Shown one piece after another: positions 643 through 29,576 of a stretch of 32,000 nt of DNA. The notes beneath the pieces were generated by a model. The model saw only the letters and a program-made list of their open reading frames with translations. It did not search any database and had not been told where the DNA came from. The DNA comes from Paramicrosporidium saccamoebae KSL3 (taxonomy: Eukaryota > Fungi > Cryptomycota). The stretch lies in contig MTSL01000208.1 in assembly GCA_002794465.1 (NCBI GenBank), positions 1 to 32,000 of the forward strand. The letters are read 5' to 3'. The translations under genes and the position numbers were made by a program. Position 1 is the first letter of the stretch. The number at the start of each line of letters is the position of its first letter.

Positions 643-2349
643 TTAGGGCGTGCAGCGTTTCATGTAGCGCGGATAGAAGCATACCTCACGGACATGGTCA
701 CGTTTGAGGGCCCACGCAAGGAATCGCTCAAAACCAAGTCCGTATCCACCATGGGGACAGGCTCCGTATTTGCGCTGGTCAGTGTACCAATAGTAAAACT
801 TGGGGTCGATTCCCTCGCGCGCATATCCCTTCATAATGTCTTCATAATCCCAGATACGCATACTACCACCAATAATCTCACCCACGCCGGGCATTAGCAG
901 ATCAGTCGAATGGGTCAGGGCTGGATCTTCCTCATCGCGGAACATGTAAAATGCCTTCATGGCCGTTGGGAAGCGACAAAGGAATATTGGCTCGCCAAGA
1001 GTGTCCACCATGAACCGCTCGGGTTTCTCGGGAATGTCCTCTCCATACTCGTAAAGGGTACCATCATCCTTGCGGAAATCAGCCTGGCGGAGCCACTCGA
1101 TCGCATCCTTGTACTGCATGCGACGGAAGGGACGCTGGGGAACCTTTAGGTCGGGATTCAATTCCAAAATCATGTCGCGGGATGAGCTACTCAGGGCCTT
1201 TTCAATTACGTCACAGACAAGGAATTCTAGACGCTCCAAGAGCTCGTCATAGGTAATGAACGGCATCTCAGCCTCAATGTGCGTAAACTCGGAGAGATGG
1301 CGACGGGTACGGGAGGCCTCGGCACGGAATGACATTTGGATGCAAAACACATCTCCCATGGACGGAATGGCAGTTTCCAGGTACAGTTGGGAACTTTGAG
1401 TGAGATATGCAGGCTCACCATAGTAATCCAACTTGAACAGGGTGGATCCACCTTCACATTCAGTCTGGGTGAGGCACGGCGTAGTGAGTTCTACATAATG
1501 CTGCTCAATGTAATGCTGGCGGAAGGCTTGCAAAAAGACACTGCGCAGCTTCATCAAAGAGCTGGCAGTCTCTCCACGCAGAACCAAATGGCGCTGGTCA
1601 TACATGACTTCAGGGCCGGCTTCCTTATTAAGTTTTGTCTCAAAGGCTTCAATGCCTGAGGGCGCAGCGTGGATCAACTTCCAGAAATCCACAATGAGCT
1701 CGTGGCCACCAGGAGCTGACTTACCCTCGGGTACCTCGACGAGCGTTCCGTACAAGGCCACAGTCGATTCTACAGTGAGTTTGGGGATATCCACTGACTG
1801 GCACATTTCCTTTCCAAGCAAGCACTGGAGATATCCGCTTCCGTCACGAAGAGTCAGGAACATCATATTCTTTCCCTGCATCCTCATTCTATGTATCCAT
1901 CCAAAAATGACCACACGCTTTCCCTCCTTGCGTGCCTTTTCAGCTTCACGAATTTTAATCTTTTGGGCCACAGGCAAAGTGGAATCTTCGGTAAGAACCT
2001 TATATTCCACCTGGGTCTCGACGGCCTGGCTTGGCAAGTTTTCGCGTTCTGCCTGCTTCCGTGCCTTTTTTTCTTGAATTTCCAAAAGTCCAACTGCCTT
2101 CTTCAGGGCCGCCTTTGGTGCATCCTGGAAGCCCTCCTCTTCGCTCTTACGGAGCATCAACTTTACGTCCTTGGGGATGGTAATCTCACCGCCGTTAATA
2201 GCCACAGAAAGCGCATGCGCCAGCGTTCCAAATGGCTTTGCCTCAGTTCCGTCACCACCATCGTCGCTTCCACAAAGTAAACATGCGTAGAGGGTCTTGC
2301 GAGGCTCGCTAAGCGAGAGGTCTTCCATTTGCTTGTGAACAGCACCCAT
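643..2349 (-). CDS. NARS1: Cytosolic asparaginyl-tRNA synthetase (class IIb), 568 aa, intronless
   Basis: Eukaryote-type N-terminal extension (GSDDGGDGTEAKPFGT), OB-fold anticodon domain (GWIHRMRMQGKNMMFLTLRDGSG), motif 2 (FRAEASRTRRHLSEFTHIEAE), motif 3 (PHGGYGLGFERF) and C-terminal YPRYMKRCTP. Confidence 0.97.
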   Translation of the reverse strand: MGAVHKQMEDLSLSEPRKTLYACLLCGSDDGGDGTEAKPFGTLAHALSVAINGGEITIPKDVKLMLRKSEEEGFQDAPKAALKKAVGLLEIQEKKARKQAERENLPSQAVETQVEYKVLTEDSTLPVAQKIKIREAEKARKEGKRVVIFGWIHRMRMQGKNMMFLTLRDGSGYLQCLLGKEMCQSVDIPKLTVESTVALYGTLVEVPEGKSAPGGHELIVDFWKLIHAAPSGIEAFETKLNKEAGPEVMYDQRHLVLRGETASSLMKLRSVFLQAFRQHYIEQHYVELTTPCLTQTECEGGSTLFKLDYYGEPAYLTQSSQLYLETAIPSMGDVFCIQMSFRAEASRTRRHLSEFTHIEAEMPFITYDELLERLEFLVCDVIEKALSSSSRDMILELNPDLKVPQRPFRRMQYKDAIEWLRQADFRKDDGTLYEYGEDIPEKPERFMVDTLGEPIFLCRFPTAMKAFYMFRDEEDPALTHSTDLLMPGVGEIIGGSMRIWDYEDIMKGYAREGIDPKFYYWYTDQRKYGACPHGGYGLGFERFLAWALKRDHVREVCFYPRYMKRCTP

Positions 2350-5339: not shown

Positions 5340-6755
5340 ATGAAGAGTGTACTCCGCTCAGCGTATGTCCTCAAGTCAGCCATGTGTCATGCTTAGCAAG
5401 AATTTTACCAAAGGATACTCGGAAATTCAGGTAAAGGTCCGCGAAGCCACTTCCAATGAAGATTGGGGACCCACCATGAATCAGCTAGAGGAGATTGCGA
5501 GAGCGTCGTTTAATCCGTTATCACCCACGGATGCCTCCTAATATTGTAGCACTCAGTTTTCAGATATTATTTATATTATCGACAAGAGATTGAATGACCA
5601 TGGAAAGAACTGGAGACATGTCTACAAGACATTGCTGGTGCTGGAATACTGTATTTGTTGTGGCGCTGACACTATGGTCACATTTGCAAAGGAGCGTCTC
5701 CACGAGGTAAAGACTCTTCGTGAGTTTATATCCTTGGACGACAACGGGACCGACAATGGCGCATGCGTTCGCGAAAAGAGCAAAGACATTGTGGGACTGT
5801 TATCAGACGACAATCTCCTTTCATCAGCCAGAAGAAACAAAAATCCCCCGATGGAGAGACGGCCGCAATCCGTCGGTCCGCTGACGATTGCAAAAGGGAG
5901 CTCCAGCAGCAATGCACTATCGACGTCTGTAGGCAATGATCTGCCGGCCTTTATGGATCGCTCACAGTTGCAAAGTCGCAAAAGCTTTGAGGATCTCCAA
6001 ACTGTCGATGAAGAAGAGGCAATGGCCATGGCATTAGAGTGCAGTAAAGCTGAATTTGAGAGTGCCAAGAATCTTCTGGACAGCAAGTAGGGATGCTTGC
6101 ATCTGACTAATCTTAGGGATTCGGGCTACCCTGTATTTTTACGAAATGCCAGTCGATCATCCTCAGCTCACAGCTCATCTCACAATCTGTAGCCCGCAAT
6201 TTTGACCTGTTCATTCTCTTAGGGCAACTAGTGCAACTTTGGCCCAGGGACCATTGTCCGCTGAACAACTCTTAGATCTAGATGATGACTCATTTGCGCA
6301 AGCCTTGGAATCCAGCTATCCTGGAACACGCCAGGCTTCAACGGCAAATGATACTTTTCTGTCGGTGCCATCCAATAGCACGAGCTATGCCGTTAATCCG
6401 TTCGAGATCCAGGTATTACACTTCTGGGCACAAAAGTATAAACTTGTAGAATGACACAATACAGCCAACGTGGACTGACCCCTTTTCCGACACGAGCAAG
6501 TATATGAACGGGAATTCGTTGGGTCAAATGTATGCCAAAGATATGAACGAGCAGCCTGGACCAAAAGAGATACATCCCATAGCGATCCCAATGAATACGT
6601 ATGCAGATTTGCAGACGGGTGCCAAGCCAGTCCTTCCGGGGAGCATGGCCCCTCAATTTGAAAACCAGCCGGCCAAGAATCCCGGAGTCCGGCAAGAGGA
6701 AACGCGTACAGCCACAAAGTCGGACTCTGTAGATCCATTTGCCGATTTGTTCTGA
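5340..6755 (+). CDS. Epsin (ENTH domain, UIM, NPF/DPF motifs), about 415 aa, 6 exons (5340-5362, 5397-5516, 5550-6086, 6117-6188, 6223-6412, 6450-6755)
   Basis: Spliced N-terminus MKSVLRSAKNFTKGYSEIQVKVREATSNEDWGP; KRLNDHGKNWRHVYKTL; UIM DEEEAMAMALECSKAE; NPF, DPF and terminal DPFADLF. Introns 34, 33, 30, 34 and 37 nt; exon sum 1248 nt. Confidence 0.93.
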
Positions 6756-7004: not shown

Positions 7005-8219
7005 ATGAGTAAGTGTGCAGTGTCGCCTATTCCCCCGTGCTTAGAGCCTCACTTAGATGCTAAAGCTCAACAGCGTGCAGTGTCGCCTATTCCCCCGTGC
7101 TTAGAGCCTCACTTAGGTGCTAAATCTCAACAGTGTGCGACGCCGCCTCTTCCCCTTTGTTTAGAGCCTCACTCGGGTGCTAAATCTCAACAGCGTGCAG
7201 TGTCGCCTATCCCCCCGTGTTTAGAGTCTTACTCAAAGCCAGTGCAATCTATTCCCCTGTGCTTAGAGTCACACTCAAGACCAACACAATCCACTCTCAT
7301 GCGCGCAGAGCCTCACTCAAAGCCAAGGCGAAGGGTCCAATTTGCGACGGAGCACCAAAAGCTATATTTTCACCCTACAAGGCCAGTATTTAAGACGACA
7401 AAGCCAGTGTGTCGGATAGCATTATCTCCCATTAACTGCGTGGCAGAGTCTGGAACGGGATCCTGGCTGGCAGACTTGCAGGGAATGCGGCAGGCACCAT
7501 TTTGTCGGTTGGATTATCTGCGAGTCAAGTCGGTAGTAGACTCCTCGTCTACTACTCCAAGTGTCTTTGAAATGGATGAGGCGTCCTGCGACGCGATGAT
7601 TGAAGGAGAGGTGGCCGCTTTGAATTTGGACTATAAAAAAGAAATCTACGTTCATTACACACTTGACTCTTGGAAAACGCAAAGCGTGACAATGGCAACT
7701 TATACGTCCAGTGTTAGTACCTTGAGGATCGACAAGTTCCGATTTATCATTCCACTACAAGACAGTATGGGCGACTTTACTCTGCAGATTGCAATCAAAT
7801 ATTGCGTTGGAGGCAAGATCTACTGGGACAATTTTAATTGTCAGAATTACCAGTTCTCGGGGACGGTTGAGGAGGAAGACGGCCAGGTCTTGGAAGAGCT
7901 AGTGGGCAGGAACGAGGCCGACTTTGATTTTATGACAGAGGTGATTACAACTGCCGTAACCAAGCCTCAGCCAATTCCAATTCCAACCACAAAGCTGTCC
8001 TGCAGCACTGCCTTGTCAGCCGTGCCATCTCCGACCAGCATAAGAATTAACTATTCAAAAAGTGCCGCTGATGTCCCGTTTGTCGTGTCAACCAAGAGCA
8101 TTCCAGGCCATGCCGCGTCCTGGACATGCACCAAGTCCTTCACCGTTCAGGCCGATTTTTCTAGATCTAGAACTCTTACTACAATGCCGCTGGATGGAAT
8201 CCCGTTTTTCATGGCCTAA
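7005..8219 (+). CDS. CBM21-domain protein, probable glycogen-targeting PP1 regulatory subunit, 404 aa
   Basis: RVxF motif (RRRVQFA) followed by CBM21 motifs EGEVAALNLDYKKEIYVHYTLDSWKT and AIKYCVGGKIYWDNFNCQNY. Confidence 0.85.
   Translation: MSKCAVSPIPPCLEPHLDAKAQQRAVSPIPPCLEPHLGAKSQQCATPPLPLCLEPHSGAKSQQRAVSPIPPCLESYSKPVQSIPLCLESHSRPTQSTLMRAEPHSKPRRRVQFATEHQKLYFHPTRPVFKTTKPVCRIALSPINCVAESGTGSWLADLQGMRQAPFCRLDYLRVKSVVDSSSTTPSVFEMDEASCDAMIEGEVAALNLDYKKEIYVHYTLDSWKTQSVTMATYTSSVSTLRIDKFRFIIPLQDSMGDFTLQIAIKYCVGGKIYWDNFNCQNYQFSGTVEEEDGQVLEELVGRNEADFDFMTEVITTAVTKPQPIPIPTTKLSCSTALSAVPSPTSIRINYSKSAADVPFVVSTKSIPGHAASWTCTKSFTVQADFSRSRTLTTMPLDGIPFFMA
7013..7325 (+). repeat. Coding tandem repeat: about 3.8 x 60 nt (20 aa) plus 2 x 42 nt
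   Basis: (C/R)AVSPIPPCLEPHLGAKSQQ units starting at 7013, 7073, 7133 and 7193. Confidence 0.92.
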
Positions 8220-10554: not shown

Positions 10555-11443
10555 ATGTCACAGTTACTGCGGGCTGCCGGAGAGTGGTTCCGTCCAGGCA
10601 GTCCGCGTGTTTTAGGGCATTTACGCAGTTTCAGCGGGTTGGTTCGGCGGTCCTTTTCCACGCACGGGACATGCACCGCCGACCTGGGGGAATCTGCACG
10701 ACAAAAAGTACTGATGAACACGAATCCTAGCCCTCTCGGTACATCGTTTTACAGAAGACAGCTTCCTATGAGTCTGACATCCTTTACTTCCTATGAGGGA
10801 CGGCAGTTGTTTAAAGAGGCGCTTAATGCCGGCATGGTGGAGAATTATTTTAGTCTCGTTGGAAACTTTACCACTCAAACCGAGACTTCGTATTGCGGAC
10901 TGGGATCGTTGGCAATGGTGCTAAACGCTATGGAGGTGGATCCTGGTCAAACGTGGAAGGGAGTCTGGCGATGGTATTCAGACGAGATGCTCGAGTGTTG
11001 TGCGCCGTTGGATTTGGTCAAGGAAAAGGGCATCACTTTGGAACAGTTTGTGTGTCTAGCCAAGTGTCACGGTCTGGAAGCGCGATCGCAACGTTTTGAC
11101 CATACAACATATGACCAATTTAAAGCCGATCTTTACAAAACTGCCACCGAGCCGGGACACCATATGGTTATTTCATTTGACCGGGCAAGTCTGGGCCAGA
11201 CTGGTATTGGCCATTTTTCGCCAATCGGCGCATATCATGCCGAAAAGGGTCTTTGTCTTGTCCTGGACGTGGCTCGATTCAAATACCCATCATATTGGGC
11301 CCCCATTGAAATGATATGGTAATCAATATCCATGAATATAAACGTTTAGGAATTCAATGGAACCTGTAGATCCTGATACTTGCCTGCCACGAGGCTATGC
11401 AATGCTGAAACTTGCAAACCCGCGCATTACTGGCTGTCCCTGA
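10555..11443 (+). CDS. PCS1: Phytochelatin synthase (glutathione gamma-glutamylcysteinyltransferase), catalytic domain only, about 285 aa, 2 exons (10555-11318, 11350-11443)
   Basis: [17 protein letters not shown] (catalytic Cys), [10 protein letters not shown] (His), LDVARFKYP (Asp); spliced [17 protein letters not shown]. Intron 31 nt. The start could instead be Met at 10714. Confidence 0.93.
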
Positions 11444-11633
11444 TATTAATGATTTATCTGGATTGTCTGTGGGTGCTGAGCATCATTGATTCTCTTCACC
11501 GCCAAAGACTACAGGCTTGTTGGTCCCCCAAGATTATCAGCCTACTGATAATGACCATCAGAAACTGTCCAACTTTTTCTAACAGCGCATTACAGCCTCC
11601 CCCCTATAGACAATTTTATTAAACACTTATTAG

Positions 11634-11654
11634 TTATTGGTCATTGGTTATTGG
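11634..11654 (-). promoter_or_regulatory. Three tandem CCAAT boxes (7-nt period) upstream of the CDK gene
   Basis: ttattgg tcattgg ttattgg, ending 31 nt before the ATG at 11686. Confidence 0.5.
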
Positions 11655-11685
11655 CTAATAGTTTTTCTTTGGTCGCCGAATTCAC

Positions 11686-12704
11686 ATGGACCGGTATCAG
11701 AAAATCGACAAACTTGGCGAGGGCACTTATGGCATTGTATATAAAGCGCAGAACAAGGCAACGGGAGAGATTGTCGCTCTAAAACGCATTCGTCTTGACA
11801 ATGAGGAAGAGGGTATTCCATGCACTGCTGTTCGCGAAATCTCCCTGCTCCGCGAGCTACAACACCCCAATGTGGTTCGACTTTTGGACATTTTACACAC
11901 GGAAAAGAAGCTGACTCTGGTCTTTGAGTACCTCGACAGCGATTTGAAAAAATATTTGGACACGACCAACCCGCCGCCCAGCGAGGGAGAGGTGGTTGTA
12001 GAGCTGTCCAAGGACTATCGTGAGTTGGTAAAAGGCTTTCTCTATCAGCTCCTCCAGGGCGTCGCTTATTGTCATGAGAGTCTCGTGTTACATCGTGACC
12101 TTAAGCCGCAAAATTTGCTGGTAAGTCGACGCGGCGAACTAAAAATTGCCGACTTTGGTCTAGCTCGTACCTTTGGGGCTCCAGTCCGCAGTTACTCCAC
12201 CGAGGTAGTCACCCTGTGGTATCGGCCACCCGATGTGCTGTTGGGAAACAAGTTTTATTCAACCTCCATTGATCTTTGGAGCGTCGGATGTATTTTTGCC
12301 GAAATGATGAATGGAAAGCCCCTCTTTCCAGGATCCAACATGCGAGATCAGTTGTTGAGAATTCAGCGGTATGGCCAAAGACTGAGTTTGTGATTATTAG
12401 GGTACTAGGCTTGCCAGACTTTAAGAACTGGTCATACTATGAAGATTTACCCGAGGCGCATGACAAGTCGCTCTGGCTTAAAGACTTTACGCCTCTCGGC
12501 CTGGAGACTGCCATCCCAACCCTTGACGATGTTGGGCTTGATTTTGTCACCGTATCCATCATATAACTATGCTAATGTCCATAGCGTTGTCTGCAGTACA
12601 TTCCCGAGCAGAGAATTTCTGCAGCCGAGGCACTCGAACATCCTCTATTTGAGAGTGTGCGTGGAAAATATGCAGTCATGTATAGTTCGATAAATAAACC
12701 ATAG
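11686..12704 (+). CDS. Cyclin-dependent kinase, CDK5/Pho85/PCTAIRE type, about 317 aa, 3 exons (11686-12368, 12401-12551, 12585-12704)
   Basis: GEGTYG, PCTAVRE helix, [50 protein letters not shown]. Introns 32 and 33 nt. Confidence 0.93.
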
Positions 12705-12899
12705 ATCTGTTGCATTGCGGGAGCCTGGAGCGCTAATCGGTCTGTTTATCGTTTGATATGTCAACCTCTTAGTCTAGAGAGTCAATCCCTTTGCCTAAAC
12801 ATTCCGCCCAACCTCCGTTTAGTCCCTGTTTGATACTTACAATCGTCAGACTCCTCACCCTTGGTCCACTACTTTACATATCGATCACGCCGGGGCTAT

Positions 12900-13655
12900 A
12901 TGTCCGAGGACGGCCAACTGGGAGGCAAAATCGAGGGATGCTGCCAGCTTTGTGAAAAAGGTCTTGCTAAATACCGCTGTCCAGGTTGTGACATGAAAAC
13001 TTGTTCCTTTATCTGTGTGCGGGATCACAAAACGGTCTCGGGATGCACAGGCAAGCGCAGTCGGGCCGGCCTCACCTATCTCCCCGTCTCCCAACTGACG
13101 CCTGAAGTGCTTCTGGATGATTATTGGCTACTCGAAGAGGCAACACAGTCAAACAAGATGCTTTCACGGGTGCTTCCAAGGAGCAGACCACGCAATCAAT
13201 ATTTGGTGAAACAGTGTGCGCTCCGTAATACTTGTCTGTCGCTGATGCCGGCGGGCATGAAACGCGCCAAACAGAACCGAACCTCTCTGAATGGAGAGAC
13301 TATCACATGGACGGTGGAATGGATCGTCTTGGAGGGTGTGGAGGATCATCCCGCCACGATGAAGATTGACGACCTGCGTCCCTTTATCACCAAAACCACT
13401 TATAGCCAATGTTCAGAGAATGAGACGCTTCTACATAGTTACTCCAGAACATTTCAAAATTCCGATGCCGCTGCAAATATCACACTGCTGCTCAAGCAGG
13501 AAGCCGACAAGGATTTATCCATCTCCCCCGTGGATATTTCCCCAACTCGCCGTCTATGGCCTGTCCATTCTCCGAACACAACATGGCAGCTTTTACTTGC
13601 AAACCGCACAATTGTAGAATTCCCCACCATTTACATTTATAGAAATACACTTTAG
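12900..13655 (+). CDS. BCD1: Box C/D snoRNP assembly factor BCD1/ZNHIT6-like, about 251 aa
   Basis: zf-HIT CQLC..KYRCPGCDMKTCSFICVRDHK..GCTGKR, LLDDYWLLEE, MPAGMKRAKQNRT, ITWTVEW, IVEFPTIYI. ATG at 12900 preferred over the TTG start in the ORF track. Confidence 0.85.
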   Translation: MSEDGQLGGKIEGCCQLCEKGLAKYRCPGCDMKTCSFICVRDHKTVSGCTGKRSRAGLTYLPVSQLTPEVLLDDYWLLEEATQSNKMLSRVLPRSRPRNQYLVKQCALRNTCLSLMPAGMKRAKQNRTSLNGETITWTVEWIVLEGVEDHPATMKIDDLRPFITKTTYSQCSENETLLHSYSRTFQNSDAAANITLLLKQEADKDLSISPVDISPTRRLWPVHSPNTTWQLLLANRTIVEFPTIYIYRNTL

Positions 13656-13866
13656 AATGTGTGATTTATAGACTCTTGCAAACAGCATCCCACTGAGGAT
13701 GGTGACTTTTAAGGGCGTCGCATACTTTAATAATACGAATACTCACCCTCACTAACAGATCCTTTATCGAATACTCTCGCAATATTCATATCATTGTTAT
13801 TACTATTGTTTTCAACTACACTGTTCGACTACATTATTCGACGACACTGCTTTAAATTGAATGAAA

Positions 13867-16800
13867 CTAATGCGCTTTGGCAGGCGTGCGAGCACGAGTG
13901 CTACGACGGCGGCTATCCTCTTCCTTTTCTTCTTCCTCCAGCACCGCTTCAATTGGACGCTTACCAGGTGTCTTGGCTGGTGTCTTGGCGAGTGTCTTGG
14001 CTGGCGTCTTGGCTGGTGTCTTTGTTGTCGTTGTCAAGTTCGTGTTCGAGTTGAGGTTGGGATGGGAGGACGAGTTTTCGTCATTGTTAATCAACTCTGA
14101 TCCAGCCGTCGTCTTTCTCTTGGCCGCCCTGGGATGATACGAAGGACTGGCCCCATCAGACTCAATTTTGGCAGCGACTCCCTTCTTGGCTGTGCTCTTC
14201 AACGTCGGCGTCTTTCCATTAGCAGCCGGTGTCTTTTTTGTTGAAGCAGGTGCCTTCTTGGCTACGGCAGGCGCTGGCGTCTTTCTCGTAGATCGGCTTC
14301 CGCGAGGTTCCTCCTTAGCAGACTCTTTCTGGATCGACTCTCCCAGAGTCACTTCTTCCTGGCTGGATTCTTCCTTGTCAACCGACTTTCCACGCTTAGT
14401 TCTGGGAACTGGGGTGGCCTTTGCCGGAGTAGTTGCACGTCCACGACGAGGCACAGTCTTTGGTTCTTCCTCCGTTGGATGGGGTTGCGAGCCGCGACGA
14501 GGAGCGCTCTTTGGTGCGGCTTTCGCTGTGGATGCGGGAGTACGGACAGATGCGATGCGAGTAGACCGACGAGGCGTTGAAGGTGCACTGCTCGTCGTCG
14601 ATTGTTCTCCCGAGTCAGCAATGTTATCAAGACAAATTTCCACTGTCGCAAGGGCGTCTCCATTGTTATCCACAGAATTGGTGCTCTCCTCCGCCGTCTT
14701 TTCGGTAATCTCCTCTTCGGCTTCCTGCGTCACGTCCGTCTCCATAGGCGAACAAACCTCTGCAATATCAGCAGTCTCTTCAGCGGCACTGGCAACATTT
14801 TCAACAGCATTATGCTCAGCACAAATTTCATTACTCTCATTTTTCTCGTTTGGTTCTCCGGCATCTTTGACCATCCCTTTCGGCGTTTCCAGAGCTAATT
14901 CTGTAGCCACAGTTTCAATTGGGTCGGCCGAGTCTTGATCAATTTGCATCAATTCGGTTACTTTGGTAGGAGCATCTTCCATCACTACATCCATTGCATC
15001 ATCTTTTACCGAATCGACCACATTATCAGTCACGTGATTACTCACATCACCATCACCATCCACATTAACATTCGCATTATCAGTCACAGTGGCATTTACA
15101 TTAACATCCACAGTACCCACCACATTGCTATCCACAGTATCCATCACATTGCTATCCACAGCCTCCACCACATTACTGTCCACAGTTCCCGTCGCATTAT
15201 TATCCGCAGTATCCACCACATTACTATCCAAAATATCAGACTTTACATCAGCTGTTGCTTCAGCTGGCTCCTTGGCCATGATTAGCTCCTCTTCGTCAAT
15301 AAATACTTGTTCAGTTAAATGTTCAGGGGCCTCGAAAAAGTTCACTCGATGGAGTTTTGGTGAGGCAGTAATCTCGGCATCAACAACCACTGGCGAGCCA
15401 CCACTGGCCACTGAGAAACGCGGCGACTTTGGGGTGGCAGACACGCTGGCATCCCGACGCGGAGTACCACCAACCCCGACAGTGCTTGTGGTAGGCGATG
15501 CGTGTCTATTAGCCGCAATGAGTGCGGGAGTGGGTGGGAATAGTAAATTAATGTTGGGAGAAGCCCCAGATGCGCGTGGTGGCGGCGTAACCAGCAGCGC
15601 TGGTGTCTTTACGGCCTGGGCAGTGGGAGTTCTTACAGCCTGTGGGGTCTGGGCAGTGGGCGTCCTTGCGGCCTGTGGAGTCTGGGCAGTAGGGGTTTTC
15701 ACCGTTTGTAAAGTCTGCGCAACAATCTGGTTGACTTCAAATTTACTGACGCTCGTCTGGGATTTGGGAGTTTTGCAAATCTCCTCAAGTTGCCTAGTAG
15801 GAGTGGTCACCTCAAAGGTCGTTGTGACAGTCTCAATGGTAATCTCCTGTACAGACTCGCTCACCTCCCATTCATTGGCAGCAGGAACTGGCGATCCACC
15901 TTCAACCGCAGCGATTGAGAAGCTTCTCCGGGGACTCTCCAGTCGGCGTGGCGAATTCTTGGACGATTCCGCAACAAATCCATTGATCAGGGCCACTGCC
16001 GTCTCCACTTTGATTGGCGTCTTTACCGGAGTGACAGCCTTTACCGTTAGAGTCTTGGTTGCTGAATTATAATGCATTGGACTACCCGGAACAGAAACAT
16101 TGTTTAAAGTCCGCGTAGGCGTTGCAACCTTCATAGGCGATCCTAGCTTTCTAGGAGTGACCTTTATAGGCGATCCCAACTTACGGGGAGTAACCTTTAG
16201 GGGGGATTCCAGTTTTCTGGGAGTAGCCTTTAAGGGAGAGTCCAATTTTCTAGGAGTAACCTTGGTGGGAGATTCCAGTTTTTTGGGAGTAACCTTGATG
16301 GGAGATTCCAGTTTTTTGGGAGTGGCCACCTTGTCAGGAACAGCCAATTTCACGGGCGACTCGGCATTAATCGGGGTTGTGGCCATCTTGGATGGTGTCT
16401 TTGCCGGCGTAGATGTCATTTTGTGAGGAGTTTCCTGTTTTGTTGGGGTCTTGGGTACCGGCGATCCCAGTTTATGAGTCGCGGTAGAACTCGCTGGTGT
16501 ACTAGTCTTCATCGGACTCATACACTTGATCGGACTCTCACACTTGATCGGACTACCACACTTGATCGGACTACCACACTTGATCGGCGTACCAGTCTTT
16601 ATCGGACTACTACACTTGGTCAGGCTCTCACACTTCATTGGACTCCCGCCCTTAGTCAGACTCTCACGCTTCATCGGACTGCCACACTTGATCGGCGTAA
16701 ACTGCATCATATCCTCTGCCTCTGCAGTTTCCTCCGTTTCGAAGCGGAAAGAACGCTCAACTACTGTGAGCACATCTCCATCGGAAAGAACATGAGACTC

Positions 16801-17115
16801 GTTCTTGTTCAGAGTAACACCGTTGACGATGGTCCCTTGGGTGCTGATATTCTCCAACACGGCCTACAATTAATCCCAACACCCAATCCTACATGGCCAT
16901 TTTCGTTGCGGTATAGACGACAATGTTCCTCGGAAATTGTCGCCAACTGAATTCTAATGTCACAATGTGCTCCTCTACAATTCAGACCCTGCGTCACGGA
17001 ATAAATACCTTCCAAAGAGATAAGAGCTGTCCGTGAGGTCAAAAGATGCGCTGTCCTGGCCGGTGCGCTTCAGGACGACAACGCGGCCATAGGATGAAAG
17101 TATCGGCGCAGGCAT
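13867..17115 (-). CDS. Large FHA-domain intrinsically disordered protein with Ki-67-like FHA, about 1061 aa, 3 exons (17115-17009, 16974-16893, 16863-13867)
   Basis: Spliced FHA: RVVVLKRTGQDSASFDLTDSSYLFGRGAHCDIRIQLATISEEHC...ISTQGTIVNG...LSDGDVLTVVERSFRFE. The rest is low complexity with many SP/TP sites. Introns 34 and 29 nt; exon sum 3186 nt. Confidence 0.9.
16126..16323 (-). repeat. 6 x 33-nt coding repeat, TP(K/R)KL(E/D/G)SPxKV
   Basis: Six 11-aa units, each containing a TP(K/R)K and an SPxK site. Confidence 0.93.
16501..16698 (-). repeat. 11 x 18-nt coding repeat, (S/T)PIKCG-type hexapeptides
   Basis: TPIKCG SPMKRE SLTKGG SPMKCE SLTKCS SPIKTG TPIKCG SPIKCG SPIKCE SPIKCM SPMKTS. Confidence 0.93.
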
Positions 17116-17140
17116 TGACGACTTCCGCTGCCCCCGACGA

Positions 17141-17154
17141 CAATTTGGCGCCAA
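17141..17154. promoter_or_regulatory. E2F-type site TTTGGCGCCAA in the FHA-gene/primase bidirectional promoter
   Basis: Matches TTTSSCGC and is near-palindromic. It lies 28 nt upstream of the FHA-gene ATG, next to ATTGG (reverse CCAAT) boxes. Confidence 0.5.
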
Positions 17155-17349
17155 GTAGACCACACTTTCCCATTGGCCGATTGCTTAGCATTGGAAATGG
17201 ACAAGTAACACAACACCCACAGTCCTACTCCCATCTACAGAGTTCGGCTTGACACTGACAACATTGGATATGATTCAACCATACTCTACCGGGCTGATTA
17301 TAGGATCGCCCGCATATCCCATCGAGACGACTGAACGGTGATTGGTCAG

Positions 17350-18820
17350 ATGAAGAGGATTACAAAGACCGGAGAGGTGGCAGTGGCCAGTGAGGTGGGG
17401 AGAAATAGTATCGGCGGTCTTGTGTCCATTCCCGATGACGCTATCCCCGAGGAACATCCACTCCGTCTTAATACCTACACCATCCCGCCCAACTACGACA
17501 TTACCGTGGAAAAGTTTGAAGAATACGCCTTTTCCCGCCTCCAATTGCTGCGTGCCGTGGAAAATGCGTCCATGAAGTTCCAACGAGAAGACGAACTGTC
17601 CAAAGCAATCAAAACGGCAGAGGACAAATGGATGCCGCTGCACTCGAATGAAAGTGCCGGCGCATACTCCTTGTTGGAGGAGCGCCGACGCGATCAGGCG
17701 GCACATTTCATTCTGCGACTGGCATTCTGCAGCACTGCGGATAATATCCGTTGGTTTGTGACACAGGAATGTCTACTCTTCCGTATCCGTTTCCATCTGG
17801 AGATGAGCAGAGAGCGCAGTGACTTTCTCAAACGCACCAACTCTCACCTGATCCCCGTCGATCCCAGCGAGAAAACGGCTGTTCTGGAGCACCTTCGGAA
17901 ATGCTCGCCCGGAAAGGAAATGGACGATTTCTTCAAGGTCCCCTTTGAATTTGTGCCCGATTTGGTGGGTCGTCGTGGCGTCTATGTGCATAAAGGCTAC
18001 GCCTATGTTCCCAAAGGCGATTCATTTTCCATTGTAATGACAAGGTTTAAGGAAAATCTAGAGTTTTGGATGGAACGCACTGCCCGAGAATTGCCCAGTC
18101 TGCGCGACGACCGTCTCTTACCGCTGCTGCGTCTGGTAAAGACGTCAGATAGCAGTTCCACCGATGTCTCCCGCGGCTTTGTGGAGGGAAAGCTTTCCTC
18201 TGCCGATCTTGACGCGGTACTCTTAACAGCACATACTGACATTGGTTTAGGCCAGCACACATTTCCCACTCTGCATGCAGAATCTCTATCGTCGCGGGTT
18301 GCAGGACAATCATCTCAAATATGGTGGCCGTCAACAGCTTGGACTGTTCCTCAAGGGCGTCGGTTTGCCCCTCGAAGAAGCAATCCTCTTCTGGCGTCGG
18401 CTCTTTGTGCCCAAATCCGGAGAGGACGGTTTCACAAAGAATTATCTCTACAATGTCCGGCACAATTATGGGCAAGAGGGGAAACGCGTTAATTATGGAC
18501 CTTACAGCTGTTCAAAGGTGATTCTAGGTTCAACGCCCGGTGTTGGTGATCATCACGGCTGTCCCTTCCGACACGCCAGCGCAGAAAGACTGACTGATAT
18601 GTTGGTGGGATATGTTGGTCCGAGTGGCACAAAGCTGAGTGGCACGCAAGTACAAGAAATTGGTGAAATGGCCAACGGAAATCATTGCCAGAGCGCCTGC
18701 ACGCGGCTCTTTGAATACACCCGTCGTCCTGATCAGCCAACTGGCCATATCGAAACATTTTCATATCCATCAAAGTTCTTTGAAGCGTCTGTGAAGCTCA
18801 CAAAAAAGGCTCCTCAATAA
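17350..18820 (+). CDS. PRI2: DNA primase large subunit, about 478 aa, 2 exons (17350-18216, 18251-18820)
   Basis: ITVEKFEEYAFSRLQLLR, RRDQAAHFILRLAFC, HFPLCMQNL, HLKYGGRQQLGLFLKGVGL, YNVRHNYGQEGKR, and Fe-S cysteines (CM, YSC, HGCPF, HCQSAC). Intron 34 nt. Confidence 0.97.
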
Positions 18821-18832
18821 ACTCTTTATTTA

Positions 18833-20626
18833 CTAATCGGCGGCCGGCGATTCTTCTGGACCTAGTTGATGTGGTAAATCACCTAGTTGACGTGGCAAGT
18901 CACCTGGTGGATGTGGTAAATCATCTGGTGGATGCGACAAATCCGGTCGATGCGACAAATCATCTGGTCGATTCGACGTATCTGCGTGATGCGGTAAATC
19001 ATCTGGTCCATTCAGCGTATCTGGTGGATTCAACGCATCTAATGGATCCAACATGTCTGGACCAAATCTCCCAGTAGATGATTCCATGTTTGACGGCAGA
19101 GCCGCACTCGTCTGCAAGGACACTTTAACACTCGCCGTTTCACCAACTACGTCAATCAGGGTCGTTTCATTTACAGGCTCCTCGGCAACTACTTCAGGTG
19201 GCTTGGCTTTTGGTACCACCGGGATCAGAGTGGGAGTAACCTCAATTCCATAATCTTTCAATTTTTTCATTTCAACCTTTCTCCTGTATACGCTGTATTC
19301 TTTTCCAATTTCAGTAGTGTTTAGCTCTCCCTCTGGCCAACAGGCCACAATCTTTTGATAGAGTGCTTTCCGAATGCTAATTTCGCTAAACGGCTCTGCC
19401 TTTATCCCAGTGCTCGCCTTGGAGAGTCGATCAAGGGCCTGGGAATCGAGTTCGGCCCGTACAATTTCAAAAATTAGCTCCCGAAGACGCTCCGTCCAGC
19501 GCGCCTTTTTCTTGCCTTCAGAGTTTGGCTCCACCGTTGGAAGAGATTCTATCTCTGCTGCCAATGACTGGAACTGCTCGGGAATCACCTTGGCCCGTAG
19601 CTCGTCTCGGTGTAGAGGGACAATCTTGAAGCTGATCAGCTTTTGCAGTGCAGCAATCGGAAATGGAAGACAACTTCCAAGATCAGCCAACACTGACTCT
19701 GGAATTTCCGTCTTTTTATCTAGCTGTCGCAGACAAGTGACCACTACTTCATTACATAATGACCGCAAGTTTGAGGGAAATCGTTTTGGGTCTGCAAATA
19801 CCGTCTTTTCAGCCTCCATTTTGAACGCTTCCAGTGCTAATTTGTATTCCAATTCCATCAATGGTTTGGCAATGTCCAGTTTCTTCCGCATCTTTTCCTC
19901 GCTCGACTCGGCCTTTTCAGGCGATTGTCGTGAAGCCTTACGGGGTGACTTTGTATGTATCGAAGGACCCACTGAGGGCTGCCCTGATGGCTGATGTGAC
20001 AACTGGTCTGACGGATGATCCGATAAATCCGGAAGCACCACCTCCACAATTTCGTTATCGCCAATGTCGGCAAGTCGATCCATGACCGATTTATCCTTCT
20101 TACTAGGAGGAACCTTTGTGCGCTTCACTTTGCTCCGTTCTTGACTCCGCTCGGGTGATTTCCGTCGTTTCGTCGCAGGTGTTCGGCGCTTCTTCTTAGT
20201 TGCCAACATCTTTTCCTCCCATAAAGGGTCGATTTTGCGTTCCGGCAACCGGCCCTTCCATACATAATAGTCACATTCAGCCGTTATAACGGGCTGTTCC
20301 TGTTCAGTATCACAGGTCCCCGCCAGGAGCTCCTGCAAGGTTATTCCCGGTGGTAGCTCGTCGTCGTCAATAAACGGGTCATCCAGGTCGTAGTCTTCCC
20401 CCTCGTCGCGACGTTTACGTATTTTTTTCCTTGGTCCCTCTTCCTCCTCTTCCGAGTCGGCCTCCACCGTCGGTTCCACATTAGGCTGTGCGCGGACGCC
20501 GCTTACCAGTGCACTAAAGTCAATCTTGTACGAATCCTTCAAGGCGCTGCTGGAGACATTGACTACAATGGTCGTGGGACCATTATCGACCTGTGGATTG
20601 ATGCCAGCCTCATGCATTGCCAGCAT
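18833..20626 (-). CDS. Ubinuclein/Hpc2-like HIRA-complex subunit, 597 aa
   Basis: HUN/HRD motif GEDYDLDDPFIDDDEL and later YYVWKG; ubinuclein-like helical region RWTERLRELIFEIV and IRKALYQKIVACWPEGELNTTEI. Confidence 0.8.
   Translation of the reverse strand: MLAMHEAGINPQVDNGPTTIVVNVSSSALKDSYKIDFSALVSGVRAQPNVEPTVEADSEEEEEGPRKKIRKRRDEGEDYDLDDPFIDDDELPPGITLQELLAGTCDTEQEQPVITAECDYYVWKGRLPERKIDPLWEEKMLATKKKRRTPATKRRKSPERSQERSKVKRTKVPPSKKDKSVMDRLADIGDNEIVEVVLPDLSDHPSDQLSHQPSGQPSVGPSIHTKSPRKASRQSPEKAESSEEKMRKKLDIAKPLMELEYKLALEAFKMEAEKTVFADPKRFPSNLRSLCNEVVVTCLRQLDKKTEIPESVLADLGSCLPFPIAALQKLISFKIVPLHRDELRAKVIPEQFQSLAAEIESLPTVEPNSEGKKKARWTERLRELIFEIVRAELDSQALDRLSKASTGIKAEPFSEISIRKALYQKIVACWPEGELNTTEIGKEYSVYRRKVEMKKLKDYGIEVTPTLIPVVPKAKPPEVVAEEPVNETTLIDVVGETASVKVSLQTSAALPSNMESSTGRFGPDMLDPLDALNPPDTLNGPDDLPHHADTSNRPDDLSHRPDLSHPPDDLPHPPGDLPRQLGDLPHQLGPEESPAAD
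18860..19060 (-). repeat. Degenerate ~21-nt coding repeat (DDL(S/P)HPP heptads) at the ubinuclein-like C-terminus
   Basis: DALNPP DTLNGP DDLPHHA DTSNRP DDLSHRP DLSHPP DDLPHPP GDLPRQL GDLPHQL. Confidence 0.8.
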
Positions 20627-24836: not shown

Positions 24837-25769
24837 CTATTTCTGTAAGGCATCACAGAGCAAGTCTATAAATCCAATGTCATCAAAACCTGGAAAGTAG
24901 TTGACATCTATTACAAACATTCGCTCCGTCTGCTCCTCGAATATCAAATCCCATCCAAACAGTGTCAGTCCCAGTTCCGTCCTTAGTGCCTCTGAGAAGG
25001 AGCTCACTTGCTGTGCATGTCGAGTGTACCTGGCCATGGCACTCTCATATTCCTCAGATGCAACGCTGCCGTTTCGCTTCATCGCTTGGCTGTTAAACTC
25101 GAGAGAATCGCCGTCCTTGTCAGCCCGCAGCGACGGCCGGAGCTGAATACGAATTTTCCCACCCACAACATACACCTTGTATAATATACCGTAATGTGGC
25201 ACATACTCTTGCAGAATATACTCTGCTCCCCCAACAATCTGCTCCACCCGATAATAGAGCGACATGCTGTGAGAGTGTTTTGCGCTACACGCCGCCACAG
25301 GCTTCCGAATTACGGGAAAACGGAGGGGCTCGTTGCATTCGCCAGTAGGAGGGAGGTGCAGACCATGGAGTGGGGCAAACCAGCGCAACAGGTCGCAAGT
25401 ACGTCGTCGGTCGGACAGAAGCGCTACATTCCAATCAACTACACGACCACCCCATCTCCTCAACTCTTCCTCAATACGGAGCAGGTCAACCTCGGGTAGT
25501 AACCAGTCACTGAGCTTGTGAAGTAGTACTGTCAGCTGTAACTCGCAAAGACGGTTCGCCGTCAAGTCCACAGGAGAAAGATGCACAAAGGTGACATGGT
25601 TGCATTTCTTAGTATGGTCGCATTTCTCAGTATGGTCGCATTCCTCAGTATGGTCGCATTCCTCAATATGGTCACATTCTTCAATATGGTTGCATTTCTC
25701 AAAGCCATGTTTGTGCCACTTTTTGGCCAGCACTACTACACCCACCCTCAACTTTTCATTCACTGTCAT
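24837..25769 (-). CDS. ITPK1: Inositol-tetrakisphosphate 1-kinase (ATP-grasp), 310 aa
   Basis: VLLHKLSD, FPVIRKPVAACSAKHSHSMSL, LQEYVPHYGILYKVYVVG, LTLFGWDLI, VIDVNYFPGF. Confidence 0.9.
   Translation of the reverse strand: MTVNEKLRVGVVVLAKKWHKHGFEKCNHIEECDHIEECDHTEECDHTEKCDHTKKCNHVTFVHLSPVDLTANRLCELQLTVLLHKLSDWLLPEVDLLRIEEELRRWGGRVVDWNVALLSDRRRTCDLLRWFAPLHGLHLPPTGECNEPLRFPVIRKPVAACSAKHSHSMSLYYRVEQIVGGAEYILQEYVPHYGILYKVYVVGGKIRIQLRPSLRADKDGDSLEFNSQAMKRNGSVASEEYESAMARYTRHAQQVSSFSEALRTELGLTLFGWDLIFEEQTERMFVIDVNYFPGFDDIGFIDLLCDALQK
25593..25700 (-). repeat. 6 x 18-nt coding repeat, (E/K)(E/K)C(D/N)H(I/T/V), inside ITPK1
   Basis: EKCNHI EECDHI EECDHT EECDHT EKCDHT KKCNHV. Confidence 0.95.

Positions 25770-25916: not shown

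Positions 25917-29576
<3,660 letters not shown>

What the first reader, a model, noticed from the sequence alone, without database searches (positions are those of the whole stretch)
13867..17115. Candidate Ki-67-like chromosome-periphery protein in a fungus-like genome
Seen: the spliced N-terminus aligns residue by residue with the human Ki-67 FHA as I recall it (RRLVTIKRSGVDGPHFPL...LFGRGIECDIRIQLPVVSKQHC...FSSTNPTQVNG...LKHGDVITIIDRSFRYE versus RVVVLKRTGQDSASFDL...LFGRGAHCDIRIQLATISEEHC...ISTQGTIVNG...LSDGDVLTVVERSFRFE). Then follow about 900 disordered residues with tandem repeats full of CDK consensus sites ((S/T)PxK), an acidic block (about 14600-15300) and a Lys/Arg-rich TPAK tail. Established: Ki-67 combines an FHA domain, a PP1-binding RVxF, repeats with CDK1 sites and charge blocks, and is characterised mainly in vertebrates. 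Inference: this may be a deep Ki-67 orthologue or a convergent mitotic chromosome coat.
Basis: partly seen in the sequence, partly recalled or inferred. Interest (0 to 1): 0.72.

Follow-up and report, generated by a model that had tools for sequence, protein, structure and literature searches.

The report
Ki-67-like protein of Paramicrosporidium, already described
The gene is real and encodes a relative of the human proliferation marker Ki-67 in an early-branching fungus that parasitises amoebae, but this same protein was already listed and analysed as a putative Ki-67 homologue in a June 2026 preprint, so only some details here are new.

Summary
A minus-strand gene (17115-13867) with two tiny introns (34 and 29 nt) encodes 1061 aa. 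It has an N-terminal FHA domain whose best match anywhere is Ki-67 (human Ki-67 FHA, E 3e-21, 46% identity; next is Rad53 at 3e-9). About 950 predicted-disordered residues follow: five tandem-repeat arrays, 68 S/T-P sites (40 full CDK consensus), an acidic block (net -55) and a basic tail.

The window is Paramicrosporidium saccamoebae (Cryptomycota). The disordered region printed for UniProt A0A2H9TFY5 in bioRxiv 10.64898/2026.06.18.733134 is identical as far as printed. That preprint already calls the protein a putative Ki-67 homologue, and GenBank already labels Coemansia relatives "Ki-67". The main claim is therefore already known.

New details:
- My model is 11 aa longer than the public one, inside the FHA.
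- There is an RVNF PP1-type motif, where the preprint lists "no".
- The tandem repeats are now defined.
- About ten uncultured relatives share gene order and conserved short motifs, including an invariant PRRSxR that matches the HMGN/Dsup nucleosome-binding core.

Function is inferred, not shown.

The parts
13867..17115 (-). Whole coding region of the Ki-67-like gene (ATG at 17115, stop codon 13869-13867); 1061 aa after splicing
   Evidence: The N-terminal 'MP...' start is shared with relatives.
17009..17115 (-). Exon 1 (residues 1-36, first two bases of codon 36)
   Evidence: L003 has an intron at the same point. L001 has no intron here and reads straight through with the same residues.
16975..17008 (-). 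Intron 1, 34 nt, GT..AG
16893..16974 (-). Exon 2 (residues 36-63; contains the Ki-67 hallmark strand GAHCDIRIQL)
16864..16892 (-). Intron 2, 29 nt, GT..AG. The position is conserved in L001 and L003; the read-through products P0002 and P0004 also break off at this point.
13867..16863 (-). Exon 3: the end of the FHA domain plus the whole disordered region in a single exon
16738..17088 (-). Ki-67-type FHA domain, residues 10-105 (interrupted by the two introns)
   Evidence: Pfam E 4.8e-15; PDB Ki-67 FHA E 2.7e-21; AF2 core pLDDT above 90; Foldseek top hit 2AFF, TM 0.90; NJ tree
15373..16737 (-). Basic S/T-P-rich region, residues 106-560 (net +31; 52 S/T-P, 33 of them full CDK consensus). Tandem arrays at 16507-16695 (SPIKCG x 10.5), 16126-16323 (TPRKLESPLKV x 6) and 15616-15697 (TPTAQTPQAxR x 2.5).
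15283..15390 (-). The conserved block in the middle of the disordered region, residues 555-590: VVVDAEITASPKLHRVNFFEAPEHLTEQVFIDEEE. D558, E560 and S564 are invariant in the family.
15337..15348 (-). RVNF, residues 569-572: candidate PP1-docking RVxF motif. It is RVDF in the close relative P0230 and R[VI]x[LM] in the wider family.
   Evidence: Chance of any such match in this protein is 0.33.
14587..15330 (-). Acidic block, residues 575-822 (net -55, pI 4.05), with tandem array 15098-15237 (VDSNVVxT x 5.8)
14557..14574 (-). PRRSTR, residues 827-832: family-invariant motif matching the HMGN/Dsup nucleosome-binding core
   Evidence: invariant P827, R828, S830 and R832; enrichment; motif structure and function from PMC12487698
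13870..14586 (-). Basic tail, residues 823-1061 (net +26, pI 10.6), with TPAK array at 13967-14022
13894..13908 (-). RRSTR, residues 1049-1053: second HMGN-like motif, eight residues from the C-terminus. Seven of the other nine family members also carry a copy near the C-terminal end.
17144..17151 (.). E2F-like site (TTGGCGCCAAA) 29 nt upstream of the ATG, in the roughly 220-nt divergent promoter shared with the DNA primase large-subunit gene. CCAAT boxes lie at 17172-17176 and 17190-17194.
   Evidence: A similar site plus CCAAT is present upstream of the orthologues in L001 and L003.

Best explanation
This is the Ki-67-family gene of Paramicrosporidium saccamoebae, UniProt A0A2H9TFY5. The model here is 11 residues longer than the public one.

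Shown:
- The N-terminal domain is a Ki-67-type FHA.
- The remaining ~950 residues are predicted to be disordered and sit in one exon.
- The sequence forms three charge blocks. The first is basic, repetitive and packed with CDK-consensus S/T-P sites (+31). The second is acidic (-55). The third is a basic tail (+26).
- The protein belongs to a family of uncultured rozellomycotan relatives with the same layout, the same neighbouring genes and a few conserved short motifs.

Inferred by analogy with vertebrate Ki-67:
- The basic tail tethers the protein to chromatin. The most likely anchors are its PRRSxR/RRSTR motifs, which match the HMGN/Dsup arginine-anchor motif that binds the nucleosome acidic patch.
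- The rest of the chain extends away from the chromatin.
- Mitotic CDK phosphorylation of up to 52 sites would turn the basic block strongly negative. That would change the chain's extension, repulsion or condensation. A phosphatase such as PP1, docked at RVNF, would reverse this at mitotic exit.
- The FHA recruits a phosphothreonine-bearing partner.
- The E2F-like/CCAAT promoter shared with DNA primase suggests expression linked to proliferation.
For: FHA identity:
- all support a Ki-67-type FHA.
- The Ki-67 hallmark strand CDIRIQ and the ERSFR(F/Y)E end are invariant.

Same protein as in the preprint:
- The printed disordered sequence is identical as far as it is printed.
- The disordered region is 953 aa long in both.
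- Both give 68 S/T-P sites, pI 7.2 and a fully phosphorylated charge of -136.

Disorder, repeats, charge and CDK sites.

Family and gene order:
- One search gives the family alignment.
- One search shows family members scoring E 1e-135 to 1e-287, then metazoan Ki-67.
- Searches show the primase large-subunit gene head-to-head with the FHA gene in all three relative loci.

Fungal Ki-67 with a canonical PP1 module: Coemansia P0103 carries SVRFGPPLRPELFDALAPPASPLRRG.

HMGN-like motifs:
- Each family member has 1-5 copies, against 0.006-0.04 expected.
- PMC12487698 shows that Dsup PPRRSSRLT and HMGN RRSARLSA bind the acidic patch.

RVNF lies in the conserved block in the middle of the disordered region and is RVDF in P0230.

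Promoter. E2F is retained in basal fungi according to PMC4862756.
Against: - Nothing outside the FHA is detectably homologous to animal Ki-67.
- Pfam PP1_bind (PF15276) and K167R (PF08065) are not found.
- A profile-profile comparison of the conserved block with the animal PP1-binding block is negative (probability 0.4%).
- An RVxF match is expected by chance in 33% of shuffles. In the wider family its last residue is L or M, which published RVxF definitions do not allow.
- The protein is neutral (net 0, pI 7.2). It is not strongly basic like most Ki-67 proteins.
- The canonical FHA Asn is replaced (STQGT). In some relatives the Ser or His is replaced too.
- The preprint's AlphaFold3 runs predicted no NIFK binding, but those used the shorter public model.
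- HMGN-like motifs are not a feature of animal Ki-67 (4 of 153 proteins versus 2 expected).
- No localisation or binding data exist.
Confidence: 0.7

Rival explanations
1. Only the FHA domain is shared with Ki-67. The disordered remainder is lineage-specific, and the protein does a different nuclear job. Examples would be a nucleolar or ribosome-biogenesis scaffold, or a cell-cycle adaptor. It would have no chromosome-coating or PP1-targeting role.
For: - There is no detectable similarity outside the FHA.
- Net charge is neutral, with a large acidic block unlike most Ki-67 proteins.
- The RVxF match is not statistically meaningful on its own.
- The canonical FHA Asn is missing.
Against: - The overall layout matches the feature list used to define Ki-67: an N-terminal FHA, a long single-exon repetitive disordered region, dense CDK sites and a basic C-terminus.
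- A kickxellalean fungus has the same FHA type together with the canonical Ki-67/RepoMan PP1 module. The full architecture therefore predates the animal-fungal split.
- The disordered regions of Ki-67 diverge beyond recognition even among animals.
Confidence: 0.22
2. The protein is a parasite effector. It would be exported into the host amoeba nucleus, where Paramicrosporidium lives, to bind host chromatin through its HMGN-like motifs.
For: - The organism is an intranuclear parasite (Table 1 of the preprint).
- The protein carries motifs expected to bind any eukaryotic nucleosome.
Against: - The N-terminus is the FHA domain itself, starting at residue 10, so there is no room for a signal peptide.
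- The gene sits head-to-head with the DNA primase gene in all three relative loci, as a housekeeping gene would.
- The promoter looks cell-cycle-regulated.
- Free-living fungi and animals have the same protein type.
Confidence: 0.04
3. The gene model is an artefact. On this view the two very short introns are not real, and the FHA similarity comes from stitching fragments together.
For: - Introns of 29 and 34 nt are unusually short.
- The public model is 11 aa shorter.
- No transcript data were available.
Against: - Without splicing, each frame ends in a stop.
- With splicing, the domain aligns end to end with the Ki-67 FHA. It folds with pLDDT above 90 into a complete FHA sandwich.
- Both intron positions recur in L003. 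L001 lacks intron 1 and encodes the same residues continuously.
Confidence: 0.03

Closest known systems
Paramicrosporidium saccamoebae A0A2H9TFY5, as analysed in bioRxiv 10.64898/2026.06.18.733134 (Haider et al., June 2026)
   Same: It is the same gene. The printed disordered region is identical as far as printed and is 953 aa long. The S/T-P count (68), pI (7.2) and fully phosphorylated charge (-136) also match. The preprint already classes it as a putative Ki-67 homologue through InterPro's Ki-67-type FHA entry.
   Different: - The public model is 1050 aa and mine is 1061. The 11 missing residues lie inside the FHA.
- The preprint lists the PP1 motif as 'no' and the repeats as '?'. I find RVNF (569-572) and five tandem arrays.
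- The preprint states that there is no sequence conservation in the disordered part. Within the rozellomycotan family there are conserved motifs.
Vertebrate Ki-67 (MKI67, human P46013)
   Same: - Both have an N-terminal FHA, 46% identical, with the CDIRIQL strand.
- Both have a long disordered, repetitive region in one exon with dense CDK sites.
- Both have an RVxF-type motif downstream of the FHA.
- Both have a basic C-terminus.
   Different: - This protein is one third the size.
- It has no Ki-67 repeats (PF08065) and no detectable KiR/PP1_bind module (PF15276).
- Its net charge is 0 rather than +113.
- It has a 250-aa acidic block.
- No similarity to the LR domain could be shown.
- Its HMGN-like motifs are not found in animal Ki-67.
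- It has no KEN box.
Fungal Ki-67-like proteins of Kickxellales (Coemansia KAJ2151461.1, named 'antigen identified by monoclonal antibody Ki-67'; Mycoemilia A0A9W7ZY29)
   Same: They have the same type of FHA (41% identity) at the N-terminus of a protein that is otherwise largely low-complexity, and they come from an early-diverging fungus.
   Different: - Coemansia keeps the canonical RVxF-KiR module (SVRFGPPLRPELFD..PPASPL). The window has only RVNF..HLTEQVFIDEE.
- Coemansia has no [RK][RK]S[AST]R motif.
HMGN proteins and tardigrade Dsup (nucleosome-binding motif RRSARLSA / PPRRSSRLT)
   Same: The family-invariant motif (T/S)PRRS(A/S/T)R(L/I/V) reproduces the core. This includes the two arginines and the serine that contact the H2A-H2B acidic patch.
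   Different: The proteins are otherwise unrelated. Nucleosome binding has not been tested here, and the window has Thr and Ile where HMGN has Ala and Leu.
RepoMan (CDCA2)
   Same: It is a mitotic chromatin protein that docks PP1 through an RVxF-KiR module, and it is thought to derive from Ki-67.
   Different: RepoMan has no FHA domain. The window protein has the FHA but no recognisable KiR module.
Rad53 FHA1 and CHFR/Dma1 FHA domains
   Same: They share the FHA fold and are the next-best matches.
   Different: They score 40 bits or fewer against 79 for Ki-67, at 27-30% identity. They lack the CDIRIQ and ERSFRFE signatures.

Membership tests
Ki-67 (MKI67) family | N-terminal FHA domain of the Ki-67 subtype (CDIRIQL strand beta-4, (D/E)RSFR(F/Y)E end) | tested here: met
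   - PDB Ki-67 FHA scores E 2.7e-21 against 3e-9 for the next family.
- The best named hits among 1.8 billion proteins are Ki-67.
- The signature residues are invariant.
- NJ bootstrap is 85.
- Foldseek's top hit is 2AFF, TM 0.90.
Ki-67 (MKI67) family | PP1-binding RVxF motif downstream of the FHA, in animals extended to the KiR module (Pfam PF15276) | tested here: inconclusive
   - RVNF at 569-572 fits [RK]-x(0,1)-[VI]-{P}-[FW] and lies in the conserved block in the middle of the disordered region.
- The chance of such a match is 0.33.
- PF15276 is not detected, and hhalign against the animal block is negative.
- The wider family has L or M at the last position.
Ki-67 (MKI67) family | Ki-67 repeats (Pfam PF08065) | tested here: not met
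   PF08065 is not detected. Among the hits it is on record only for vertebrate proteins. The window has its own unrelated tandem repeats, all in one exon.
Ki-67 (MKI67) family | Long intrinsically disordered region with dense CDK (S/T-P) sites | tested here: met
   - Residues 101-1061 have pLDDT below 50 and no secondary structure.
- There are 68 S/T-P sites against 20.9 +/- 3.9 in shuffles.
- There are 40 full CDK-consensus sites against 2.6 +/- 1.6 in shuffles.
Ki-67 (MKI67) family | Strongly basic protein whose charge reverses on mitotic phosphorylation | tested here: not met
   Net charge is 0 and pI 7.2, while human Ki-67 has pI 10.2. Only the 106-560 block is basic (+31) and could reverse. 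Several other putative homologues in the preprint's table are also acidic or neutral.
Ki-67 (MKI67) family | C-terminal chromatin-binding (LR) domain | tested here: inconclusive
   A basic tail is present (net +26). Its end, RRSTRARTPAKAH, resembles fish Ki-67 ends such as TRRGRSAKK. A positional scoring test was negative: the best window lay in the tail in 1 of 153 proteins, against 1.03 expected.
Ki-67 (MKI67) family | Localisation to the mitotic chromosome periphery, nucleolus or heterochromatin | not testable with these tools
   This needs microscopy.
Ki-67 (MKI67) family | FHA binding to phosphorylated NIFK | not tested
   There is no NIFK gene in the window and no complex-prediction tool. 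The preprint reports 'no, AF3' using the 1050-aa public model.
HMGN/Dsup-type nucleosome-binding motif | Core RRS(A/S)RL with two acidic-patch arginines and a serine | tested here: met
   The window has PRRSTRI (827-833) and RRRSTRA (1048-1054). P, R, S and R are invariant across the family. Members carry 1-5 copies against 0.006-0.04 expected. The motif definition comes from PMC12487698.
HMGN/Dsup-type nucleosome-binding motif | Specific binding to the nucleosome acidic patch | not testable with these tools
   This needs a nucleosome gel-shift or structural experiment. A sequence search of the motif region against PDB chains found nothing.

The most novel reading that the evidence does not exclude
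The Ki-67 relatives of Rozellomycota may be anchored to chromatin by HMGN/Dsup-type arginine-anchor motifs that bind the nucleosome acidic patch. There would be two or more such motifs per molecule, flanking the basic tail. These would be the first fungal proteins with this motif. They would also give a defined, minimal 'FHA - CDK switch - acidic spacer - nucleosome anchor' version of Ki-67. Separately, the reported divergence of the Paramicrosporidium FHA, and its failure to dock NIFK in silico, may be an artefact of a mis-spliced public gene model.
Probability: 0.3. Interest if true: 0.55.

Novelty: already known. Interest (0 to 1): 0.33.

Why it matters
Ki-67 was long thought to be confined to vertebrates, so a fungal relative helps date the protein to at least the common ancestor of animals and fungi. 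That point has now been made in print for this very protein, so the finding itself adds little.

What could still matter:
- A corrected gene model. It restores a fully Ki-67-like FHA and may change the published in-silico conclusions about this species.
- A family of compact (770-1330 aa) relatives with conserved short motifs. In a protein class whose disordered regions are otherwise unalignable, these motifs give concrete, mutable handles: a possible PP1 dock and HMGN-like nucleosome anchors.

Tried and rejected
- Pfam PP1_bind and K167R: not detected, even at E up to 10.
- hhalign of the conserved block against the animal RVxF-KiR block: probability 0.4%. By eye, RVNF..HL.EQVF.DE resembles RVSF..HL.PELFDE, but I could not make this significant.
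- The C-terminal end resembles fish Ki-67 ends. In a positional PSSM test the tail held the best match in 1 of 153 proteins, against 1.03 expected, so positional homology is not claimed (the first attempt, timed out).
- HMGN-like motifs in animal Ki-67: [RK]RS[AST]R[LIVM] occurs in 4 of 153 proteins against 2 expected. It is not a general Ki-67 feature.
- PDB sequence search with the motif region: no hits.
- Identifying the public 1050-aa model. I enumerated all GT-AG models that give 97 residues before TAEAED; there are 158. The most plausible keeps both donors and uses downstream acceptors (introns of 55 and 41 nt), which deletes GAHCDIR and AVLE. An exact look-up found neither this model nor mine in the protein collection, so the question stays open.
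- Metagenome scan for more family members. The first query had no usable conserved stretch. The second gave 29 loci, but only the already known JADMIO01 contig carries the PRRSxR/EIxASP signature.
- E2F motif count over the whole window: 5 against 4.1 expected, so not enriched. Only the positional conservation upstream of the orthologues is suggestive.
- Organism identity. The AsnRS neighbour pointed to a relative of P. saccamoebae at 83% identity. The identical disordered sequence in the preprint's supplement then showed that the window is P. saccamoebae itself.
Full report
**1. The observation**

The finding lies on the minus strand. A 997-codon open frame (13867-16860) begins inside an FHA domain. 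The missing N-terminal part lies in two small upstream exons.

Joining 17115-17009, 16974-16893 and 16863-13867 removes two GT..AG introns of 34 and 29 nt. The result is a single frame of 1061 aa starting MPAPILSSYGR.

The model has independent support:
- Without splicing, each frame runs into a stop.
- In the close relative L003, both introns sit at the same codons.
- In the more distant relative L001, intron 1 is absent and the same residues are encoded continuously, while intron 2 is at the same place.
- The spliced domain folds in AlphaFold2 into a complete FHA sandwich with pLDDT above 90 through the core.

**2. The FHA domain is of the Ki-67 type**

- Pfam FHA scores E 4.8e-15.
- Against all PDB chains, the best hits are the two human Ki-67 FHA entries. 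They score E 2.7e-21 (79 bits), cover residues 11-114 and are 46% identical. Rad53 FHA1 follows at 3e-9 and CHFR at 1.5e-7.
- An exhaustive HMMER search of 1.84 billion representative proteins gave 412 hits below 1e-10. Most of the listed hits are long proteins with the domain at residues 3-100. Those I looked up are Ki-67 of fish, newt, turtle and frog, 'Ki-67-like' proteins of tunicates, and unnamed mollusc proteins.
- Single-domain scores separate cleanly. Ki-67-type proteins score 70-116 bits, and other (multi-FHA) proteins score 51 bits or less.
- In a neighbour-joining tree, the Ki-67-type domains including the window separate from other FHA domains with bootstrap 85. The window's own clade has bootstrap 91.
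- Foldseek ranks 2AFF first (TM 0.90, rmsd 1.5 A).
- The beta-4 strand CDIRIQ and the ERSFR(F/Y)E end are invariant. The GR, S and H phosphothreonine-binding residues are kept in the window.
- The canonical Asn is not kept: the window has STQGT where vertebrates have STNPT. Some relatives also replace the Ser or His.

**3. The rest of the protein**

- Residues 101-1061 have pLDDT below 50 and no predicted secondary structure.
- Tandem Repeats Finder finds five arrays in the big exon. Their units are 6, 11, 11, 8 and 4 codons.
- There are 68 S/T-P sites against 20.9 +/- 3.9 in composition-preserving shuffles. Of these, 40 are full [ST]Px[KR] sites, against 2.6 +/- 1.6.
- Charge is arranged in blocks. 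Residues 106-560 are net +31, residues 575-822 are net -55 and residues 823-1061 are net +26. The whole protein is net 0 with pI 7.2.

**4. Whose gene it is, and prior art**

The neighbouring asparaginyl-tRNA synthetase is 83% identical to a protein named from Paramicrosporidium saccamoebae. The next named hits are only about 55% identical.

[quoted passage not shown]'. It selects putative Ki-67 homologues from InterPro's Ki-67-type FHA entry. Three are fungal: Malassezia, Mycoemilia and Paramicrosporidium saccamoebae.

Its supplementary table prints the 'Paramicrosporidium' disordered region, 953 aa starting TAEAEDMMQFTPIKCGSPMK. This is identical to window residues 109 onward as far as it is printed.

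Its Table 1 row is UniProt A0A2H9TFY5: 1050 aa, pI 7.2, 68 S/T-P, phosphorylated charge -136. These figures match my numbers.

The window is therefore P. saccamoebae, and this exact protein has already been proposed as a Ki-67 homologue. GenBank also already names Coemansia proteins 'antigen identified by monoclonal antibody Ki-67'. The central claim of the finding is correct and already known.

**5. What I can add**

(a) Gene model.
- The public entry is 11 residues shorter than mine. Both share the 953-aa disordered region, so the difference lies within the FHA.
- One plausible cause is that a gene predictor could not accept introns of 34 and 29 nt. Using the same donors with the next acceptors (55 and 41 nt) gives exactly 1050 aa. 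That model deletes GAHCDIR and AVLE, which includes the Ki-67 hallmark strand.
- I could not confirm this, because neither model is in the protein collection.
- If true, it would explain why the preprint found this FHA structurally aberrant and unable to dock NIFK in AlphaFold3.

(b) PP1 motif.
- The preprint lists 'no' for this protein. HRVNF (568-572) fits the same regular expression.
- It lies in the conserved block in the middle of the disordered region and is RVDF in the close relative P0230.
- The evidence is weak. A match arises by chance in 33% of shuffles. The wider family has R[VI]x[LM] instead. PF15276 is not detected, and a profile-profile comparison with the animal block is negative.
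- Coemansia does carry the canonical module SVRFGPPLRPELFDALAPPASPL. The full Ki-67 PP1 module therefore existed in early fungi and appears degenerate in this lineage.

(c) A family.
- About ten uncultured relatives (770-1330 aa, from Logan, ENA and JGI assemblies) share the same layout.
- In all three relative loci examined, the DNA primase large-subunit gene lies head-to-head with the FHA gene. Other neighbours recur in some loci: zf-HIT/BCD1 in L001, ubinuclein/HUN and phytochelatin synthase in L004, Band_7 in L001 and L004.
- Their conserved motifs are V(V/I)DxEIxASPxLSPR(V/I)xL, (T/S)PRRSxR(L/I/V), DNSP...RRSxR, EEDKEN and a C-terminal RRSTR...AKK.
- The EEDKEN motif is a KEN box in most relatives but reads DEN in the window.

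(d) HMGN-like motifs.
- PRRS(A/S/T)R(L/I/V) is invariant in the family. It reproduces the nucleosome-binding core of HMGN (RRSARLSA) and Dsup (PPRRSSRLT).
- Cryo-EM shows that core bound to the H2A-H2B acidic patch through its arginines and serine (PMC12487698).
- Each family member has 1-5 [RK][RK]S[AST]R copies against 0.006-0.04 expected, all in the basic tail.
- The motif is not enriched in animal Ki-67 and is absent from Coemansia.

**6. Likely mechanism (inferred, not shown)**

- The tail binds chromatin, probably at nucleosome acidic patches and at DNA.
- The acidic block and the N-terminal part project away from the chromatin.
- CDK phosphorylation of the basic repeat block would convert +31 to a strongly negative charge. 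That would change extension, repulsion or condensation, as proposed for vertebrate Ki-67 (review PMC8354752).
- A phosphatase would reverse this, and the FHA would recruit a phosphoprotein partner.
- An E2F-like site (TTGGCGCCAAA) with CCAAT boxes lies 29-80 nt upstream of the ATG, in the promoter shared with primase. A similar site recurs upstream of the orthologues in L001 and L003. E2F is retained in basal fungi (PMC4862756). This suggests proliferation-linked expression. The motif is not enriched across the window as a whole.

**7. Rivals**

- The main rival is that only the FHA is shared and the protein has another nuclear role. I give this about 0.2.
- A secreted effector is unlikely. 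The FHA starts at residue 10, and the gene has housekeeping-type conserved neighbours.
- A gene-model artefact is unlikely, given the conserved intron positions and the confident fold.

**8. Verdict**

However, the protein is already in the literature as a putative Ki-67 homologue. Remaining interest lies in the probable mis-annotation of the public FHA, in the family-level motifs, and in the HMGN-like nucleosome-anchor hypothesis.

Noticed in passing
window 16864-17008: The two introns in the FHA region are only 34 and 29 nt long. The public protein (1050 aa, from the preprint's Table 1) is 11 aa shorter than the model built here, and the loss falls inside the FHA. Gene predictors with a minimum intron length may mis-splice other genes of this genome in the same way.
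   Followed up: partly
window 17116-17340; L001 about 5885-5925; L003 about 2615-2665: The Ki-67-like gene and the DNA primase large-subunit gene are head-to-head, about 220 nt apart. An E2F-like palindrome (TTGGCGCCAAA) with CCAAT boxes recurs upstream of the orthologues in two other species.
   Followed up: partly
window 643-2349 (-): The asparaginyl-tRNA synthetase is only 83% identical to the one AsnRS named from P. saccamoebae in the protein collection (P0236, 613 aa, on a 10.9-kb contig). Yet the Ki-67-like gene shows that the window is P. saccamoebae. The public assembly may therefore hold a second, divergent copy: a paralogue, a second strain or a second haplotype.
   Followed up: no
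window 10555-20626; L001; L004: The primase large-subunit gene is head-to-head with the FHA gene in all three uncultured rozellomycotan loci (L001, L003, L004). Other window neighbours recur in some of them: ubinuclein/HUN and phytochelatin synthase in L004, zf-HIT/BCD1 in L001; Band_7 lies downstream in L001 and L004. FHA identity to these relatives is roughly 50-75%.
   Followed up: partly
window 25917-29375 (-): This ORF encodes cohesin SMC3 (E 1.4e-240 to fission-yeast Psm3, 6YUF_C). It lacks about 48 N-terminal residues, so a further short upstream exon is expected.
   Followed up: partly
window 7005-8219 (+), 10555-11322 (+), 24837-25769 (-): Three ORFs have notable Pfam matches: a CBM21-domain protein (the module of glycogen-targeting PP1 regulatory subunits), a phytochelatin synthase and an inositol-1,3,4-trisphosphate 5/6-kinase. 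They are notable as retained genes in a small parasite genome.
   Followed up: no
window 14168-14938, 15089-16072, 16423-16950 (+): Long antisense open frames (175-327 aa) overlie the repeat-rich exon. They are low-complexity mirror images of the coding strand and not genes.
   Followed up: partly
P0103 (Coemansia sp. RSA 637, KAJ2151461.1): This kickxellalean 'Ki-67' has a complete animal-type PP1 module, SVRFGPPLRPELFDALAPPASPLRRG. The RVxF-KiR module therefore predates the animal-fungal split.
   Followed up: partly
window residues about 990-996 (13870-14100) versus relatives P0006, P0007, P0008, P0012, P0014: An EEDKEN motif (a KEN box, an APC/C degron) is conserved near the C-terminus of most family members. 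It reads DEN in the window and in its closest relative P0230.
   Followed up: no
L007, L009-L012, L016 (metagenome contigs): Several environmental contigs carry single uninterrupted ORFs of 1560-1775 aa. Each has a Ki-67-type FHA, a canonical RVSFG..PE module and 40-118 S/T-P sites. They probably come from marine protists or animals.
   Followed up: no
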